A stretch of DNA of 64,000 bases. It comes from Carpediemonas membranifera BICM (taxonomy: Eukaryota; Protista; Fornicata). The notes below the pieces were generated by a model. That model saw only the letters and a list, made by a program, of their open reading frames with translations. It was not told where the DNA came from and made no database searches. Location of the stretch: positions 186,001 to 250,000 of the forward strand of contig JAHDYR010000006.1 in the NCBI GenBank assembly GCA_019828565.1. Reading direction: 5' to 3'. This document shows, one piece after another, positions 12,273 through 17,704 of the stretch (the stretch's first letter is position 1; the number at the start of each line of letters is the position of its first letter). A program made the translations under genes and the position numbers.

Positions 12273-14351
12273 TTACTCCTTGCGGCCGTCAGGGATGAGA
12301 TGAAGCACAGGGCCAACCTCAGTCACCTCGTCCACGTAACAGAAGCCCTTGCGCTCGATCTGGATGATGTCACCCTTCTTCACACCGGCAAACTGCTTGG
12401 GATCAATGAAGATGGTGCGCGCCACCTTCGACTCGGGGTTAAGGAAGTCAGCGGGATCATCGCCGTCTTCGGGGATCTTCTTGGTCACGAGATGACCGAA
12501 CTTGATCATGGTGGCCGGCTGGGTGGCAGCTTCCTTGGCCAGCCAGGTGATCTTAGCAGTGCCCTTGAAGTCGGTGTCCTCCAGCGTCAGCCGGGCCTTC
12601 ACGCCGGTCTCGGAGATCTCCTCGATGACGATGTTTCCCCAATCCATCAAGGTGACCTTCTCGCCAACCTTGAATGAGGTGGCATCCGCCTTGTCAATGA
12701 CGACAGTTGGGCCCATGAGCACGGACTTCTCGCCCACAGCGGGGTTCTTCTTGTGAAGGGGGCGGGACTCGGTCACAGTCGAGTCAACGTTGGTCAAAGT
12801 CAAATCTACCATATCCGACTCAATTCCGACGAATCTAGGGGCGATGGGGTCGATGATCTTCTTGTTGAGCACCCACAGTTTCTCCCACTCCATGTAGTTG
12901 GAGTTGCGACTCTGGCCCTGTGAGACAACGAACTCGCGAAGGGCCTGCACCGTGAGACCGCGTCTGATGATGCCCTGGACGGTGGGGAATCGAGGGTCCC
13001 ACCAACCGTCGACGATCCCGTCATCTACAAACTTCTGGAGCTTGCGCTTTGACAGGACAGTGTTGACGAGGTTCATGCGGCTGAACTCAACGACCTTGGC
13101 GCATCTGAGGCCGAGTGCCTGGGCGATCCACTGGTACTGCTCGTTCCTGTCCTGGAACTCAAGTGTCCTCAGGGCGTGTGTGACTCCCTCGATGGAGTCA
13201 ACAATAGGCACGGCGAGGTCGTACGTCGGGTAGATCAGGTACTTGGTGCCGGTGCGGTGATGGGCCTGGCCGGAGTAGCGGTAGAGGACGGGATCGCGCA
13301 TGGTGCCGTTGGGGGACTTCATGTCGATCTTGGCGCGGAGGACGCAGGTTTGGTCGGCGCCCGTCTTCATGGCCTCCCACATCTCGAGGTTCTTCTCGAC
13401 ACTGTTGGCACGGCAAGCAGACTCGATGCCCTCGAGACGCTGGTCGCGCATGGTGTTAACGTCCGAGTTATCGACGTACGCGTTGCCTTCGCGGATCATT
13501 TTCTCCGCGCACTGCATGATGTAATCAAAGTGGTCAGACGTGTAGGACATCGAGGACCATGTAATACCGAGCGTCTTGAGGTCACGCTGGATGTTATCGA
13601 CGAACTCGATGTTCTCCTTCGTCGGGTTGGTGTCATCGAGACGGAAGAGCATCTTCCCCTTGTAAATCTCGGCAACATAGTGGTTAAGCATGGCCGCCTT
13701 GACGTGGCCGATGTGAAGATAGCCCGACGGCTCGGGTGGGAAGCGGGTGACGACCTCGCCCATCTTGCCGTCGGCCAGGCCGAAGGAAGCGGCGGTGCCC
13801 TGGACGCCAGTCTTCTTACCGACCTTAGCCTGCGCCTTCTTGGCCGACTCAGAGACGGGCTTGGTCATGCCGCTGCGCTTGAACGTGGCAATGCCCTGGG
13901 AGATGAGCTTGGTGCCCTTGACGAGCTCAGTCTGGGTGGCCATGAAGGCGAGGTAGCGCGAAATATTGGGGAACGCGGCATCGGCGGTGAGACTGGAGGC
14001 AAGGATGACATCAGCGATGGTCATGCGGCCGTCGAGGAGGAACGGGCGGAAGAGAAGGTGGCCGTCGATGATCTTGGCGTGCTCAGCGGGGTTGCCGAGA
14101 GCGAGAGCAATCCAGCGCTCGCAAAGAGCCTTGGAAGTGGCATCGGTGGGCATGAGAGCGCACTTGAATGTGGTGAGGAGGTATGTGATGATGTCCTTCT
14201 CGCCAATGAGGGTGAGGTCGTCGGAAACCTTGAGAGAGACTTCCTTGACGTCCTTGGAGACAACAGCCTCGCACTTGGGGGCCTTGGTGATGGCCTGGAG
14301 AACAGCAGCCACAGCGAGGGGCTTTTGAGTATCAGCAAAGGAGAGCTGCAT
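12273..14351 (-). CDS. EARS: Cytosolic glutamyl-tRNA synthetase with N-terminal GST-like domain
   Basis: RFPPEPSGYLHIGH, LSKRKL, WDPRFPTVQG and QIERKG motifs. The start is taken at MQLSFAD, where strong codon bias begins (the ORF track extends to 14477). Confidence 0.95.
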   Translation of the reverse strand: MQLSFADTQKPLAVAAVLQAITKAPKCEAVVSKDVKEVSLKVSDDLTLIGEKDIITYLLTTFKCALMPTDATSKALCERWIALALGNPAEHAKIIDGHLLFRPFLLDGRMTIADVILASSLTADAAFPNISRYLAFMATQTELVKGTKLISQGIATFKRSGMTKPVSESAKKAQAKVGKKTGVQGTAASFGLADGKMGEVVTRFPPEPSGYLHIGHVKAAMLNHYVAEIYKGKMLFRLDDTNPTKENIEFVDNIQRDLKTLGITWSSMSYTSDHFDYIMQCAEKMIREGNAYVDNSDVNTMRDQRLEGIESACRANSVEKNLEMWEAMKTGADQTCVLRAKIDMKSPNGTMRDPVLYRYSGQAHHRTGTKYLIYPTYDLAVPIVDSIEGVTHALRTLEFQDRNEQYQWIAQALGLRCAKVVEFSRMNLVNTVLSKRKLQKFVDDGIVDGWWDPRFPTVQGIIRRGLTVQALREFVVSQGQSRNSNYMEWEKLWVLNKKIIDPIAPRFVGIESDMVDLTLTNVDSTVTESRPLHKKNPAVGEKSVLMGPTVVIDKADATSFKVGEKVTLMDWGNIVIEEISETGVKARLTLEDTDFKGTAKITWLAKEAATQPATMIKFGHLVTKKIPEDGDDPADFLNPESKVARTIFIDPKQFAGVKKGDIIQIERKGFCYVDEVTEVGPVLHLIPDGRKE

Positions 14352-14623
14352 GCCGAATGGGCACAGTCGATTCGGAGTCGATCCAGCAACACTGGAGAAT
14401 GGAGCTGGTTGAGCACCTAATGGCATAACCGTACCACTGCAGCGGCCAATGACCTTCCTGTGCATCCTAGCGCTCAATACTGAGCCCGACCCCGTTCGTA
14501 AAACTCAGCCACTCAGAGCTGCTGTAAGCACTTGAACAGCGTCACTACCCAGCACTACCAGCAGTGCCAGTTGCTTTCGAAGCACAGCCGACTCGGACAA
14601 TTCTGCGCAATGATCACAACGAC

Positions 14624-17600
14624 ATGCCTGGTGCTGTACTAAGCATAGCTATTGGCCAATGTGGCATCCAAGTAGGCACAATGTACATGCGGTACATACT
14701 GAAACATCTTAGTGGCGATCTGCGCGAGAAGCACATTTTTATGCAGAAGGAGCCGTCCACAGGCTCAATGTGCGCTCGATTCATGCTTATTGACACCGAA
14801 CCAAACGTTATAGCGCAAGTAGACGCAGATGAGGAGCTATCACAGCTCATTCCCCGAAGAAATCGCTTTGCCCTCAGCGATGACGGCGCGGGCAACAACT
14901 GGGCCATCGGCTTCCAGCGCTACGGCACCGAATACGCCAAGACGCACAACAACACCCACCCAGTCATCAAGCGCGTCCGCACGCTCGCCATGGATGGCGT
15001 GGCCGCCGTAGTCGTCTTCACATCCCTGTCGGGCGGAACGGGCAGTGGGCTCGGGTCATACCTCGTGGCCGCGATCAAGACAGAGATCCTAGCATCCCTC
15101 CTAGGGGTCAGGCTGGTCTCTGTGGCCGTCCGGGGAGAGGAGGTGGTGACAGGCCCGATCAATCAGTTGATGGCCGCTGCTACCATTGCCCAGCATGTAG
15201 ATACGTGTATACTATGCGATAACGCCTCCATACAGGCCCAGCTGACCCACGTCCAGGGTCATGGTCTCGACCGCACCTCTGAGGCAGGCAGGGGCTATGA
15301 CGAGGAGAACGGACTGATCGCCCAAGCGGTGGGTGAGATCGCACTCGCCAGTGCCCAACCAGGGAGCGCCTGCATGGATTGGGGCGACCTCCTCGTCCAC
15401 CGCATCGTCTCGGTCGGGTCCGTCGCTATTGACACCAGAGTCGACGCGAGCAGAGCTGTCGCGGCAGAGCTGGCCGGGCTGTGGCGCCACCACTCGTTCG
15501 AACTGGGGTCCGGTGGCCAGCACACCATCCACTCGGGCGTGGTCGTTTGCCGTGGCCCGGTCCCGCTGTTTAACTCGGTGGAAGAAGCCATCGCAAAACC
15601 TCCCACCACGCTCAGGCGCAGGTTCGACTCAGCAGCTCGACTCCCCATTCGAGTTTTTCACGTCGAGTCGGCCGAGTCATCAAGAAATGTGCTCACCCAT
15701 GTGACAAACTACGCGTCACTCGGCGAATACATCGAATCTAGTCTTATCGCCCAAGTTGACAGGTACCAGCGCGGCCCAAAGATTGGTGGCTGTTCACCAA
15801 TGATATCAAACTATGTACGCGAGAAAGAGGACTTCGAGGCAGACATCGAGGAGGCCAAACGCGCCCTCCGCCGCATCACCCACATTGCAGACAAGACATC
15901 ACTGCCCCAGACCACTCCGCCCGAGCTGACCGACGCCATGCCACCGCACCCGCGACCTGTGGCCCAACCTGGGTCGCCCGTGCAGTATTTCGTGCTCATC
16001 GGGCAGTGCGGAAACCAGCTTGGGCGATCAATCTTGTCGACACTGTTTGCCTCGCATTTCGACACGGGCGAAACAGCCCATGAATTTTTCTGGAGGACGG
16101 AGGAAGGTGAACTCCGACCCTGGGCGGTTGGCGTGGATCTAGACTCAAGAATCCAGGAATCTAGCAAATATTGTGCAGATTTCCCAGATGCTGTCCGAAT
16201 GTCTCATTTGTTCACAGTAGGTGGTGGTGCTGGTACGAATTGGCGCGACGGGTTTGATGCAATCAGCAGGGGTCCAGTCAGTGTCGCCGACTCTGTCGTC
16301 CGAGCAATCAAAGGCGACCTCGTCACGGCCGGCCGCACTCTCCGGCGTCTGGTGTTCGTCCACTCCACCGGCGGCGGCACAGGCTCAGGTGGAAGTAGTG
16401 TTCTCCTCCGCCGACTGTCGGCCGAGTTCCCCCAGGCCATGGTTCTCGACGTCGCGGTCGTCCCCGACGCTGACGAGTGGGGCGGCGCAGACCCTAGGCC
16501 GTGGGTCAACTCCCTGCTCGCACTCAGTTGTGTGGGGCGGTACAGCGACCATGCACTGGCCATGACGAACGGCGGGATCGCAGAGGAGCTGAGATTTGCT
16601 GGATCTACCGGATCTAGACTCAGTCTTGACGCAATCAACGCTGCAATGGCCCACCACGTTGTGCACGCCATCCTTTCCCTGTCTAGAATCGAGCCGGCTG
16701 TCGGTACTCCCTTTATCTCAGCCCACGACCTCGGTGGTGACGCCATCACCCCCCTCACCCCAGGCCAAGTCGTGCGGGAGCCGGGCATGAGAGGGTCGTG
16801 GCACACCCTGACGGCCTCTGCCGAGTCGATTGTCGAGACCCTCGCAGCCAGCGGCAGAAGTCTACAAGAAGCGGTACTTACACTTTGCGGCCCTCCCCCC
16901 AAGTTCGGGTGGCTCCTGGATACTCCGCCGGACGATGACATGGGCCCACGCCAGGCCCGCTTTTGTGCTGCACTGCAGGCTGTCCAACGGCGCGGGTTGA
17001 CCCCCCTGGTCTCGGGGCACAGGGTCGGGTTCGAGTTGTCAGGCCGGGTGATTGTCTCGGGCTTGTCGGAGTCGGTGGCTGCTGCTCTGAGGAAGGCATG
17101 CGAGATTGTGAGCAGCAACTGGTCGGAGCTGCTGGCGACTAAGTTTGACTCTGAAGCAGTCGCTGCCGCCCTTGCAACAGTCAGCCTGATTTTGAGTAAT
17201 TCAACGTTCGACCAGACGGAGAACATTCGATGGAGGATCATGACCTCACTAAAGCTCGATGCCCTCCAGGGAATCAAGCCAAGTGACCCGGACACCGTGA
17301 CTGCCACCTGGGACAGCCTACCAAACCTAGAGCCTGACGCGGCAGAGAAGCTCGCAAGTATACTAGACGGGGCAATCCAGCGCAGTTTAGAGCGATGGGA
17401 TGGCCGGCATGCACTCACGATCCAGCCCCCCCGCGCCCCGCCAGACCCCGAGGAGCCAACGGACGTCTATGTCCGGTGTACGGCGAGCGATGCTGAAGTC
17501 AGCTTCACCATGGAGATGTTCGACACGGGCCTCGTACCGCTGGTTAAGGCCTACCGCCTAGCCCCGCAGAATAATCCGATGGCGCTCAGAGAGAAGTTGG

Positions 17601-17704
17601 GGTGGACGTTCTTGACGAAGGAGGGCTTTGAATGGATGAAGGCGGCGTACTGCGAGAGCAGAGAGTCGGTGGGTTCGTACTACGTCGAGGAGAAGAGGCA
17701 GTAA
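14624..17704 (+). CDS. Divergent protein with two tandem tubulin-like GTPase domains plus a C-terminal extension
   Basis: Domain 1 has IGQCGIQVG, IDTEP, GAGNNWAIG, SLSGGTGSG and CDN. Domain 2 has IGQCGNQLG, VDLD, GAGTNWRDG, HSTGGGTGSG and MTN. Both lie in one uninterrupted ORF. Confidence 0.85.
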   Translation: MPGAVLSIAIGQCGIQVGTMYMRYILKHLSGDLREKHIFMQKEPSTGSMCARFMLIDTEPNVIAQVDADEELSQLIPRRNRFALSDDGAGNNWAIGFQRYGTEYAKTHNNTHPVIKRVRTLAMDGVAAVVVFTSLSGGTGSGLGSYLVAAIKTEILASLLGVRLVSVAVRGEEVVTGPINQLMAAATIAQHVDTCILCDNASIQAQLTHVQGHGLDRTSEAGRGYDEENGLIAQAVGEIALASAQPGSACMDWGDLLVHRIVSVGSVAIDTRVDASRAVAAELAGLWRHHSFELGSGGQHTIHSGVVVCRGPVPLFNSVEEAIAKPPTTLRRRFDSAARLPIRVFHVESAESSRNVLTHVTNYASLGEYIESSLIAQVDRYQRGPKIGGCSPMISNYVREKEDFEADIEEAKRALRRITHIADKTSLPQTTPPELTDAMPPHPRPVAQPGSPVQYFVLIGQCGNQLGRSILSTLFASHFDTGETAHEFFWRTEEGELRPWAVGVDLDSRIQESSKYCADFPDAVRMSHLFTVGGGAGTNWRDGFDAISRGPVSVADSVVRAIKGDLVTAGRTLRRLVFVHSTGGGTGSGGSSVLLRRLSAEFPQAMVLDVAVVPDADEWGGADPRPWVNSLLALSCVGRYSDHALAMTNGGIAEELRFAGSTGSRLSLDAINAAMAHHVVHAILSLSRIEPAVGTPFISAHDLGGDAITPLTPGQVVREPGMRGSWHTLTASAESIVETLAASGRSLQEAVLTLCGPPPKFGWLLDTPPDDDMGPRQARFCAALQAVQRRGLTPLVSGHRVGFELSGRVIVSGLSESVAAALRKACEIVSSNWSELLATKFDSEAVAAALATVSLILSNSTFDQTENIRWRIMTSLKLDALQGIKPSDPDTVTATWDSLPNLEPDAAEKLASILDGAIQRSLERWDGRHALTIQPPRAPPDPEEPTDVYVRCTASDAEVSFTMEMFDTGLVPLVKAYRLAPQNNPMALREKLGWTFLTKEGFEWMKAAYCESRESVGSYYVEEKRQ

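What the first reader, a model, noticed from the sequence alone, without database searches (positions are those of the whole stretch)
14624..17704. Single-chain 'double tubulin': two full divergent tubulin GTPase domains fused in one ORF
Seen in sequence: every tubulin nucleotide-binding loop occurs twice and in order within one uninterrupted ORF. T1 is GQCGIQVG / GQCGNQLG, T2 is DTEP / DLD, T3 is GAGNNWA / GAGTNWR, T4 is SGGTGSG (about 15029) / GGGTGSG (about 16370), and T6 is DN / TN. A Pro-rich linker (about 15890-15980) joins the domains, and an unrecognised tail of about 170 aa follows. Domain 1 keeps a T7-like 'PGSACMDWGDL' with an acidic residue near the alpha-tubulin catalytic Glu position, plus a C-terminal helix 'EADIEEAKRAL'. 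T7 in domain 2 looks degenerate. Established: alpha to zeta tubulins, BtubA/B and FtsZ are single-domain subunits that dimerise or polymerise non-covalently. I know of no characterised natural tandem tubulin. Inference: a covalent pseudo-heterodimer that could seed, cap or template a microtubule or basal-body structure, or a new tubulin class. The two halves are very different from each other, so the fusion is not a recent duplication.
Basis: partly seen in the sequence, partly recalled or inferred. Interest (0 to 1): 0.82.

Follow-up and report, generated by a model that had tools for sequence, protein, structure and literature searches.

The report
Natural two-tubulin fusion protein in Carpediemonas
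One uninterrupted gene of the anaerobic flagellate Carpediemonas membranifera encodes two very different tubulins joined by a short proline-rich linker; its sister species encodes the same two tubulins as separate, unlinked genes, which argues they work as a pair, and I found no paper describing a natural tandem tubulin.

Summary
Window 14624-17704 (+) is one 1026-codon ORF with two Pfam Tubulin GTPase domains (E 1e-28 and 6e-17).

- **Domain 1 (res 1-424):** folds confidently as a complete tubulin (pLDDT 87; TM about 0.8 to solved tubulins).
- **The "unrecognised tail":** it is not an extra domain. It holds domain 2's own S10, H11 and H12 motifs behind large low-confidence insertions.
- **Relatives:** an exhaustive search of 1.84 billion proteins found only two close relatives, a 465-aa match to domain 1 and a 704-aa match to domain 2. 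Both come from a sister Carpediemonas assembly (probably C. frisia), on different contigs, and both are reciprocal best hits. This is a Rosetta-stone fusion.
- **Family of each half:** domain 1 carries epsilon-tubulin signatures. Domain 2 sits on the delta/zeta side of the tree, and the genome has no other delta or zeta. AU tests do not make either placement secure.

Best reading: a covalent epsilon-like plus delta/zeta-like heterodimer, analogous to the delta-epsilon pair of centrioles.

Not shown: transcript continuity (no RNA run was served) and head-to-tail packing (the complex prediction gave no answer).

The scan had not reported this before on other DNA.

The parts
14624..17704 (+). Whole coding sequence: 1026 codons plus TAA stop. 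Tandem tubulin (domain 1, linker, domain 2).
   Evidence: The ATG at 14624 is supported by the sister-species orthologue P0005, which starts MPGNVIAVHVGQGGNQIG against MPGAVLSIAIGQCGIQVG here. The public model P0001 (1007 aa) starts at Met20 and so cuts off strand S1 and the T1 loop.
14624..15895 (+). Tubulin domain 1 (res 1-424): a complete tubulin with GTPase domain, intermediate domain and helices H11/H12. Epsilon-tubulin-like.
   Evidence: Pfam Tubulin E 1.3e-28. AF2 pLDDT 86.7, pTM 0.89, H12 = res 401-426. Foldseek E 3e-24, TM 0.77-0.82 to alpha, beta and gamma tubulins over about 460 columns. Epsilon signatures in T5 and T7.
15359..15391 (+). T7 loop of domain 1, PGSACMDWGDL. Asp252 and Asp255 align with alpha-tubulin Asp251 and the catalytic Glu254.
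   Evidence: Alignment: epsilon NVDLNE, domain 1 CMDWGD, sister-species orthologue NLDWSD.
15896..15979 (+). 28-residue Pro-rich linker (res 425-452). It has no stop in frame and contains one in-frame ATG (Met439, 15938-15940).
   Evidence: pLDDT is below 50 from residue 434 to the end of the domain-1 model, and over the first residues of the domain-2 model. GC 0.73.
15980..16690 (+). Tubulin domain 2, GTPase domain (res 453-689). Its first codon, GTG (Val453), aligns with the start Met of the separate sister-species gene P0006.
   Evidence: Pfam Tubulin E 6e-17. AF2 pLDDT is about 75-96 over most of this part. PDB phmmer best hit is gamma-tubulin, E 1e-15. Alignment.
16691..17485 (+). Domain 2 T7 region, intermediate domain and insertions (res 690-954). 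Low-confidence structure. Includes the S10 motif LILSNST (17186-17206).
   Evidence: AF2 pLDDT is mostly 35-65. Alignment to tubulins. VIA-align covers the model from 12 to 587 against tubulin 1-439.
17486..17701 (+). Domain 2 C-terminal helices H11-H12 (res 955-1026). FTMEMF corresponds to tubulin F-T-A-M-F. TKEGFEWM corresponds to tubulin TGEGMDEM.
   Evidence: The same motifs are present in the sister-species protein P0006 (LGSMTLLLESG and LSRTGYADLEM).

Best explanation
The window comes from Carpediemonas membranifera. Its gene at 14624-17704 encodes a single 1026-residue chain made of two complete but very different tubulins.

**What it is**
- Domain 1 is an epsilon-tubulin-derived paralogue. 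It has an intact GTP pocket and a T7 loop that keeps acidic residues at the two catalytic-loop positions.
- Domain 2 is a fast-evolving delta/zeta-like tubulin. It has an intact GGGTGSG loop, several non-canonical pocket residues and large insertions in its C-terminal half.

**How it arose (shown)**
- In the sister species the two are separate genes at unlinked loci.
- So the C. membranifera gene is a fusion of two partners, or less likely the sister species split it.

**How it works (inferred)**
- The halves pack head-to-tail into an intramolecular heterodimer like alpha-beta tubulin and like the proposed delta-epsilon dimer.
- The covalent link enforces 1:1 stoichiometry and assembly at low concentration.
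- The unit acts at basal bodies, in the role that delta/zeta and epsilon tubulins play in building or stabilising triplet microtubules.
- It is probably not a lattice-forming microtubule subunit, because domain 1 has shortened M and H1-S2 loops.
For: **Architecture**
- One ORF with two Tubulin domains.
- Domain 1 is a confident full tubulin fold.
- The domain 2 model aligns to tubulins at Z 32, with 355-385 of about 430 residues at 3.0-3.3 A, spanning to the last residue. It has recognisable S10, H11 and H12 motifs.

**Organism**
- 24.24 Mb in 69 contigs, matching PMC8516963 Table 1.
- Paralogues carry C. membranifera accessions.

**Rosetta stone**
- phmmer against 1.84e9 representatives finds only P0005 (465 aa, E 1e-50, covering res 1-382) and P0006 (704 aa, E 3e-29, covering res 455-814).
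- Both are in GCA_002919055.1, on different contigs with unrelated neighbours. Stops lie after P0005 and before P0006.
- Their neighbours are 50-60% identical to C. membranifera proteins.
- Reciprocal best hits: E 1.7e-55 against 2.4e-21 for the next locus, and 4.6e-34 against 1.5e-15.

**Family placement**
- Careful ML tree: domain 1 lies inside the epsilon group (support 91/95). Domain 2 is sister to zeta (84/80), within a delta+zeta split (99/100).
- Family HMM scores: domain 1 and P0005 score best on epsilon. Domain 2 and P0006 score best on zeta or delta.
- The epsilon T5 signature V-[IV]-T-[SA]-P-Y-N occurs in 13 of 13 epsilon sequences. Domain 1 has VVTGPIN and P0005 has VTTAPYN. The epsilon T2 signature D-[MT]-E-E appears in P0005.
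- The genome has no canonical delta or zeta, so domain 2 is the only candidate.

**Literature**
- Delta and epsilon tubulin co-immunoprecipitate (PMC5653238).
- AlphaFold-Multimer predicts them to form an alpha/beta-like heterodimer with delta at the minus end (PMC11896610).

**Selection**
- GTP-loop motifs of both halves are conserved between two species that are only 31-35% identical here.
Against: - **No transcript or read evidence across the linker.** No RNA run was listed, and no independent assembly carries the protein.
- **The family assignments are not statistically secure.** Forcing domains 1 and 2 into one clade costs only 10 lnL (AU p 0.24). Placing domain 2 just outside delta+zeta costs 0.8 lnL. 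Domain 2 lacks the delta/zeta T5 signature. The epsilon HMM is also the most generic one, since alpha and beta score high on it.
- **A better epsilon exists elsewhere in the genome.** L015 scores 272 bits on the epsilon HMM, so domain 1 is a paralogue, not the epsilon orthologue.
- **The second half of domain 2 is modelled at low confidence** (pLDDT below 50 for 239 of 587 residues). Its tubulin-like arrangement could be partly imposed by the alignment.
- **Fusion versus fission cannot be polarised** without an outgroup.
- **Basal-body function is pure inference.**
Confidence: 0.55

Rival explanations
1. Artefact. The locus really holds two adjacent tubulin genes, and an assembly error (a hidden stop or indel in the GC-rich linker) merged them into one ORF.
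For: - The assembly is Nanopore-based with Illumina data (PMC8516963).
- The linker is 73% GC.
- The +1 frame has a TGA at 15927, eight bases before an in-frame ATG at 15938, so a single 1-nt indel error could in principle create TGA...ATG.
- The sister species has two genes.
- No reads could be examined.
Against: - Both halves are in the same frame with no stop over 3078 nt.
- The sister-species genes are not adjacent, so 'two neighbouring genes' is not the ancestral layout.
- An 8-nt spacer between two eukaryotic genes is implausible.
- The deposited gene model also spans both halves.
- The stand-alone domain-1 orthologue has an acidic tail that is replaced here by a Pro-rich linker.
Confidence: 0.07
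2. The fusion is real, but the halves do not form an intramolecular dimer. Domain 2 is a degenerate pseudo-tubulin scaffold. Alternatively, the chain works as a bivalent adaptor or cap: each half binds a different partner, for example alpha/beta or gamma tubulin or the conventional epsilon L015, or chains polymerise by inter-chain contacts.
For: - Domain 2 has non-canonical pocket residues. In T3 the Asn is Thr (Cys in P0006). In T2 the Glu is Asp. In T6 the Asp is Thr (Ser in P0006). It also has a T5 insertion and an ill-defined T7.
- Its intermediate domain is low-confidence with large insertions.
- A 28-residue flexible linker permits many geometries.
- The genome has three extra gamma-like paralogues and a separate epsilon as possible partners.
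Against: - The odd pocket residues are conserved in kind between the two species, and GGGTGSG is intact. This argues for a maintained nucleotide site.
- Gene fusion of two family members whose relatives (delta and epsilon) are known to bind each other is most simply explained by mutual binding.
Confidence: 0.2
3. Domains 1 and 2 are a Carpediemonas-specific tubulin pair. They arose by lineage-specific duplication and rapid divergence, making them effectively a new class, and their function is unrelated to the delta/epsilon/zeta module.
For: - No orthologue outside the genus among 1.84e9 representatives. The next hits are E 1e-17, against 1e-50 and 3e-29.
- The stems are very long (1.46 and 1.79 changes per site).
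- AU does not reject domains 1 and 2 as sisters (p 0.24).
- A true epsilon already exists (L015).
- Language-model neighbours are a mix of divergent tubulins.
Against: - The free ML tree separates them with a 99/100 split.
- Domain 1 and its orthologue share epsilon-only T5 and T2 signatures.
- Domain 2 and P0006 are the only sequences tested that score at least as high on the delta or zeta HMM as on epsilon and gamma.
- The genome otherwise lacks delta and zeta, although epsilon is reported to be co-conserved with them (ZED module, PMC5653238).
Confidence: 0.15

Closest known systems
Delta-tubulin / epsilon-tubulin pair (TUBD1-TUBE1, with TEDC1/TEDC2) of centrioles
   Same: - Two non-canonical tubulins of different families that act together.
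- Delta and epsilon co-immunoprecipitate (PMC5653238).
- They are predicted to form an alpha/beta-like heterodimer (PMC11896610).
- Domain 1 shows epsilon signatures and domain 2 groups with delta/zeta.
   Different: - Here the two are one polypeptide.
- Both halves are far more divergent than ordinary delta, zeta or epsilon tubulins.
- Domain 1 is a paralogue beside a conventional epsilon (L015).
- Domain 2 is nearer zeta than delta and carries large insertions.
- TEDC partners were not looked for.
Alpha/beta-tubulin heterodimer
   Same: - Both have two paralogous full tubulin folds.
- Domain 1 keeps an acidic residue at the alpha Glu254 position of T7, as alpha does.
- Both have one canonical and one altered nucleotide pocket.
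   Different: - Alpha and beta are non-covalent and are assembled by cofactors.
- Alpha and beta are about 40% identical, whereas the halves here give no BLAST hit to each other.
- The M loop and H1-S2 loop are shortened in domain 1, so a microtubule lattice is unlikely.
Zeta-tubulin (ZED module)
   Same: - Domain 2 is sister to zeta in the tree (84/80).
- It scores best on the zeta HMM.
- A Trichoplax zeta query hits domain 2 at E 8e-18, against 3e-5 for human delta.
   Different: - It lacks the zeta T5 motif P-L-Q-H-Y-N.
- It has 150-200 extra residues.
- The placement is not secured by the AU test.
Bacterial BtubA/BtubB
   Same: - A dedicated pair of divergent tubulins that co-occur and heterodimerise.
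- BtubA and BtubB are among the PDB and fold hits.
   Different: - BtubA/B are separate proteins from adjacent genes and form mini-microtubules.
- There is no specific sequence affinity here.
Misato/DML1 tubulin-like proteins
   Same: Long, divergent eukaryotic members of the tubulin superfamily.
   Different: - No match to Misat_Tub_SegII or Tubulin_3.
- Misato has one tubulin-like unit, not two.

Membership tests
Tubulin/FtsZ superfamily | GTPase domain matching Pfam PF00091 above its curated cut-off | tested here: met
   Two matches, 101 and 63 bits against a cut-off of 33.
Tubulin/FtsZ superfamily | Signature T4 loop (G/A/S)GGTGSG and T1 GQxG | tested here: met
   Domain 1 has SGGTGSG and GQCG. 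Domain 2 has GGGTGSG and GQCG.
Eukaryotic-type tubulin (full fold) | N-terminal GTPase domain, intermediate domain and outer helices H11/H12 - domain 1 | tested here: met
   AF2 pLDDT 86.7, pTM 0.89. TM 0.77-0.82 to alpha, beta and gamma tubulin over the whole length.
Eukaryotic-type tubulin (full fold) | Same three parts - domain 2 | tested here: inconclusive
   VIA-align Z 32 with 355-385 residues aligned, spanning to the C-terminus. S10, H11 and H12 motifs are present. However, pLDDT is below 50 for much of residues 690-980.
Epsilon-tubulin (for domain 1) | Falls inside the epsilon clade | tested here: inconclusive
   Inside the epsilon group at 91/95. AU does not reject a domain 1 + domain 2 clade (p 0.24).
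Epsilon-tubulin (for domain 1) | Epsilon-specific loop signatures: T5 V-[IV]-T-[SA]-P-Y-N, T2 D-[MT]-E-E, T7 N-x-D-x-x-E | tested here: met
   - T5: VVTGPIN in domain 1 and VTTAPYN in P0005, against 13 of 13 epsilon sequences and none of the delta, zeta or gamma sequences.
- T2: VDTEE in P0005, but IDTEP in domain 1.
- T7: CMDWGD in domain 1 and NLDWSD in P0005.
Epsilon-tubulin (for domain 1) | Being the genome's epsilon orthologue | tested here: not met
   L015 scores 272 bits on the epsilon HMM, against 119 for domain 1. Domain 1 is at best an epsilon-derived paralogue.
Delta/zeta-tubulin (for domain 2) | Falls on the delta/zeta side of the tubulin tree | tested here: inconclusive
   Split 99/100, sister to zeta at 84/80. 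Exclusion from delta+zeta costs only 0.8 lnL. HMM preference for zeta or delta is 7-15 bits.
Delta/zeta-tubulin (for domain 2) | Family loop signature in T5 (delta V-I-V-Q-N-Y-N, zeta P-L-Q-H-Y-N) | tested here: not met
   Domain 2 has ADPRPWVN and P0006 has GKLRSLYN.
Rosetta-stone (partner) gene fusion | The two parts exist as separate genes in another genome, and each is the reciprocal best hit of its part | tested here: met
Alpha/beta-like tubulin heterodimer (works-like claim) | Head-to-tail contact, with the T7 face of one half on the nucleotide face of the other | tested here: inconclusive
   Complex prediction returned 'no answer'. There is no full-length model.
Misato/DML1 | Pfam Misat_Tub_SegII (PF10644) and Tubulin_3 (PF14881) | tested here: not met
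   Neither was reported at E up to 1.

The most novel reading that the evidence does not exclude
The tandem tubulin is a self-contained polymerising unit that builds a Carpediemonas-specific, non-microtubule tubulin structure. Because this genus lacks Ndc80 and most structural kinetochore proteins as well as ORC and Cdc6 (PMC8516963), the genus-restricted, fast-evolving tubulin pair could be part of the unknown alternative chromosome-segregation apparatus rather than of basal bodies.
Probability: 0.07. Interest if true: 0.92.

Novelty: new variant of a known kind. Interest (0 to 1): 0.72.

Why it matters
All characterised tubulins (alpha to zeta, BtubA/B, archaeal tubulins) are single-domain subunits that associate non-covalently. 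A natural single-chain pair would be a new architecture for the superfamily.

- **Genomic evidence for pairing.** The same two proteins are separate genes in the sister species. The fusion is therefore independent genomic evidence that an epsilon-type and a delta/zeta-type tubulin form a dedicated pair.
- **Relevance to centriole biology.** How delta, epsilon and zeta tubulins assemble and act is still open (PMC11896610).
- **A practical reagent.** A naturally fused, obligately 1:1 pair could be expressed as one chain for structure determination and for GTPase and assembly assays.
- **The organism.** It adds to the picture of C. membranifera as a free-living eukaryote with heavily remodelled cell-cycle and cytoskeletal machinery.

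Tried and rejected
1. **Word-indexed protein searches.** The search for homologous proteins with the full protein and with domain 1 alone returned only the protein itself and a few generic tubulins. The index is swamped or blind at this divergence. The exhaustive phmmer search was what found the orthologues.
2. **Reads.** The look-up of sequencing runs (kind rna) listed none. The paper names RNA-seq run SRR15678499. The tool did not offer it, so I did not submit it.
3. **Complex prediction.** Complex prediction on domain 1 (1-430) plus domain 2 (453-1022) gave 'no answer'. The score was 0.00, ESMFold2 did not use my alignments, and the partner folded poorly. This is not evidence either way.
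4. **Protein atlas.** The protein-atlas search on each half returned nearest clusters that are assorted divergent tubulins (archaeal, 'delta chain family') at 0.86-0.94. That does not discriminate.
5. **Synteny.** None of the C. frisia neighbours of P0005 or P0006 lies in this 64-kb window, so synteny gives no clue to how the fusion arose.
6. **Independent assemblies.** The look-up of encoding contigs for the 1026-aa and 1007-aa forms found nothing on record.
7. **AU tests.** They reject neither 'domain 1 + domain 2 sisters' nor 'domain 2 just outside delta+zeta'.
8. **Misato, and an extra C-terminal domain.** Both were considered and rejected.
9. **Earlier ARL2-TBCD note.** I tried to check the earlier scan note of an ARL2-TBCD fusion in this genome with Pfam TFCD_C. 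There was no match anywhere, controls included, so the check was uninformative.
10. **Identity of GCA_002919055.1.** No paper names the accession. I assign it to C. frisia from the 50-60% identity of neighbouring genes, a GC content of about 58% and the study context. It is not proven.


Full report
**1. Observation**

The region holds one open frame on the + strand, 14564-17704. From the ATG at 14624 it encodes 1026 residues and ends in TAA at 17702-17704. Pfam reports the Tubulin/FtsZ GTPase domain twice. The first match covers residues 5-205 (E 1.3e-28). The second covers residues 18-213 of the second-half segment, about residues 457-652 of the protein (E 6e-17). Both are far above the 33-bit cut-off. 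The two halves give no BLASTP hit to each other.

**2. Organism and tubulin repertoire**

The assembly has 24.24 Mb in 69 contigs, which matches Carpediemonas membranifera in Table 1 of PMC8516963. Two paralogues are exact matches to C. membranifera GenBank proteins. A Pfam scan of the whole genome, plus family HMMs and a tree, give this repertoire:
- seven beta loci and six alpha loci;
- gamma (L014) and three gamma-like paralogues (L016, L017, L018);
- one conventional epsilon (L015, 272 bits on an epsilon HMM);
- the double tubulin.

Human delta and Trichoplax zeta queries find no dedicated orthologue. Their best hits are beta-tubulin.

**3. Structure**

Domain 1 (residues 1-454, with a 50-sequence alignment) folds with pLDDT 86.7 and pTM 0.89. 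It is a complete tubulin ending in H12 at residues 401-426. Foldseek gives E about 1e-23 and TM 0.77-0.82 to alpha, beta and gamma tubulins and BtubB.

The second half (residues 440-1026) folds with a confident GTPase domain, but confidence is low beyond about residue 690 (mean pLDDT 61). Even so, VIA-align matches it to solved tubulins at Z 32. It aligns 355-385 of about 430 residues, from model residue 12 to 587 against chain 1-439.

The sequence alignment explains this. The supposed tail contains three tubulin motifs:
- S10: LILSNST, against beta's FIGNSTA;
- H11: FTMEMF, against beta's FTAMF;
- H11'-H12: TKEGFEWM, against beta's TGEGMDEM.

So there is no extra C-terminal domain. Domain 2 is a whole tubulin with roughly 150-200 inserted residues around S9-S10 and before H11. 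This part rests on a low-confidence model and on short motifs, and the alignment may partly impose the fold.

**4. Relatives**

Word-indexed searches were uninformative. An exhaustive phmmer search of 1.84 billion representative proteins found 1145 tubulin-like hits but only two close ones:
- P0005: 465 aa, E 1e-50, 37% identity, matching residues 1-382.
- P0006: 704 aa, E 2.7e-29, 36% identity, matching residues 455-814.

Everything else is at E 1e-17 or worse.

Both come from assembly GCA_002919055.1, and independently from Logan contigs of SRR4018424. They lie on different contigs, 4.6 kb and 17.5 kb, with unrelated neighbours. P0005 is followed by several stops, and P0006 is preceded by several in-frame stops. 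Genes flanking P0006 are 50-60% identical to C. membranifera proteins, and the GC content is about 58%. The source is therefore a close relative, most likely the C. frisia metagenomic assembly discussed in PMC5437931 and PMC8516963. That assignment is inferred.

Searched back against the C. membranifera genome, P0005 hits domain 1 at E 1.7e-55 (next locus 2.4e-21). P0006 hits domain 2 at E 4.6e-34 (next locus 1.5e-15). These are reciprocal best hits. The gene is thus a Rosetta-stone fusion of two proteins that are separately encoded in the sister species.

Three details hint that separate genes are ancestral:
- The stand-alone domain-1 orthologue ends in an acidic tubulin-like tail (…EMEFREEY…), which the Pro-rich linker replaces here.
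- The stand-alone domain-2 orthologue starts directly at strand S1.
- Its start Met aligns with a GTG Val codon (15980) here.

Without an outgroup this polarity is not established.

**5. Which tubulins are the halves?**

With named delta, zeta, epsilon and gamma references, I built a careful ML tree (LG+C20, 45 rows).
- Domain 1 plus P0005 (support 100/99) sits inside the epsilon group (91/95), next to the Carpediemonas epsilon L015 plus P0017 (82/75).
- Domain 2 plus P0006 (100/99) is sister to zeta (84/80), within a delta+zeta split (99/100).

Family HMM scores agree:
- Domain 1: epsilon 119, delta 106, zeta 96, gamma 90.
- P0005: epsilon 157.
- Domain 2: zeta 87, delta 72, gamma 67, epsilon 62.
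- P0006: delta 93, zeta 87.

Domain 2 and P0006 are the only sequences tested that do not prefer epsilon or gamma.

Loop signatures support the epsilon affinity of domain 1. The T5 motif V-[IV]-T-[SA]-P-Y-N is present in 13 of 13 epsilon sequences and in no delta, zeta or gamma sequence. Domain 1 has VVTGPIN, P0005 has VTTAPYN and L015 has VITAPYN. P0005 also has the epsilon T2 motif VDTEE.

Caveats:
- All four sequences sit on very long branches.
- AU tests reject neither a domain 1 + domain 2 clade (delta lnL 10.2, p 0.24) nor domain 2 just outside delta+zeta (delta lnL 0.8).
- Domain 2 lacks the delta/zeta T5 signature.

I therefore call domain 1 an epsilon-derived paralogue with fair confidence, and domain 2 delta/zeta-like tentatively. 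Domain 2 is the only delta/zeta candidate in a genome that has epsilon. Epsilon is reported to be co-conserved with delta and zeta (the ZED module; PMC5653238).

**6. Mechanism**

Shown:
- There are two tubulin units in one ORF, joined by a 28-residue low-complexity linker.
- Domain 1 has a near-canonical GTP pocket. Its T7 loop has acidic residues aligned with alpha Asp251 and the catalytic Glu254 (CMDWGD here, NLDWSD in the sister species, NVDLNE in epsilon). The conventional epsilon L015 has lost these residues (PVTLPG).
- Domain 2 keeps GGGTGSG. It has substitutions shared in kind by both species: the T3 Asn is Thr or Cys, the T2 Glu is Asp, and the T6 Asp is Thr or Ser. Its T7 is ill-defined but contains a conserved D-L-x-x-D.
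- Domain 1 has shortened H1-S2 and M loops.

Inferred:
- The halves pack head-to-tail as an intramolecular heterodimer.
- By analogy with the predicted delta-epsilon dimer, where delta is at the minus end (PMC11896610), domain 1's T7 would sit on domain 2's nucleotide. I could not test the orientation.
- The short lateral loops argue against a microtubule-lattice role.
- The likeliest site of action is the basal body, where delta and epsilon are needed for triplet microtubules (PMC5653238).
- The covalent link would guarantee stoichiometry and dimer formation.

**7. What could not be shown**

No RNA run was served, and no independent assembly of the locus is on record. Continuity of the transcript therefore rests on three things: the assembly itself, the deposited gene model that spans both halves, and the authors' statement that the predicted proteome agrees with the transcripts.

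An assembly artefact would need a specific indel in the linker. A TGA lies in the +1 frame at 15927, eight bases before an ATG. I rate this at about 7%. The complex prediction returned no answer.

**8. Novelty and verdict**

Four literature searches on tubulin fusions and the non-canonical tubulins found no natural tandem tubulin. Long hits in the protein search are single tubulins with insertions, not doubles. The finding is a new architectural variant of a known family, and its evolutionary logic bears directly on how non-canonical tubulins pair.

My confidence by claim:
- Two-tubulin single ORF in the assembly: about 0.95.
- Real fused gene: about 0.9.
- Fusion of interacting partners forming an intramolecular dimer: about 0.55.
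- Epsilon plus delta/zeta identity: about 0.5.
- Basal-body role: about 0.35.

Noticed in passing
window 14624-14683: The public gene model (P0001, 1007 aa, in NCBI, UniRef and EukProt) starts at Met20. It therefore omits strand S1 and the GQCG T1 loop of domain 1. The upstream ATG at 14624 is supported by the sister-species orthologue.
   Followed up: yes
G000 loci L016 (C68), L018 (C15), L017 (C17), L014 (C65): C. membranifera has, beside gamma-tubulin (L014), three further divergent gamma-like paralogues. L016 and L018 are sisters. L017 has a C. frisia orthologue, P0021, at only 37% identity. An earlier scan note mentions a divergent gamma-tubulin next to a GCP gene.
   Followed up: partly
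L015 (G000 C58:28112-29340): The conventional epsilon-tubulin of C. membranifera has lost the T7 Asn, Asp and Glu residues (PVTLPG against NVDLNE in epsilon). The epsilon-like domain 1 keeps acidic residues there, so the catalytic-loop role may have moved to the fused paralogue.
   Followed up: partly
G000 whole genome: No canonical delta- or zeta-tubulin gene was found. Human delta and Trichoplax zeta queries hit beta-tubulin best.
   Followed up: yes
L005 (G000 C63:341609-342235) and G000 C2:438055-438198: One of the seven beta-tubulin loci has only a 369-aa open frame (truncated copy). A 56-aa tubulin fragment lies on contig 2. These are probably pseudogene remnants, and earlier scan notes mention decayed beta-tubulin fragments.
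   Followed up: no
L021:1854-3251 (P0005, sister species): The stand-alone domain-1 orthologue ends in an acidic tail containing EMEFREEY, reminiscent of the alpha-tubulin EEY end. The fused C. membranifera protein lacks this tail.
   Followed up: partly
window 12273-14477 (-): A divergently transcribed glutamyl/glutaminyl-tRNA-synthetase-like ORF with a long N-terminal extension lies about 150 bp upstream of the tubulin start. The two genes share a very short intergenic region.
   Followed up: no
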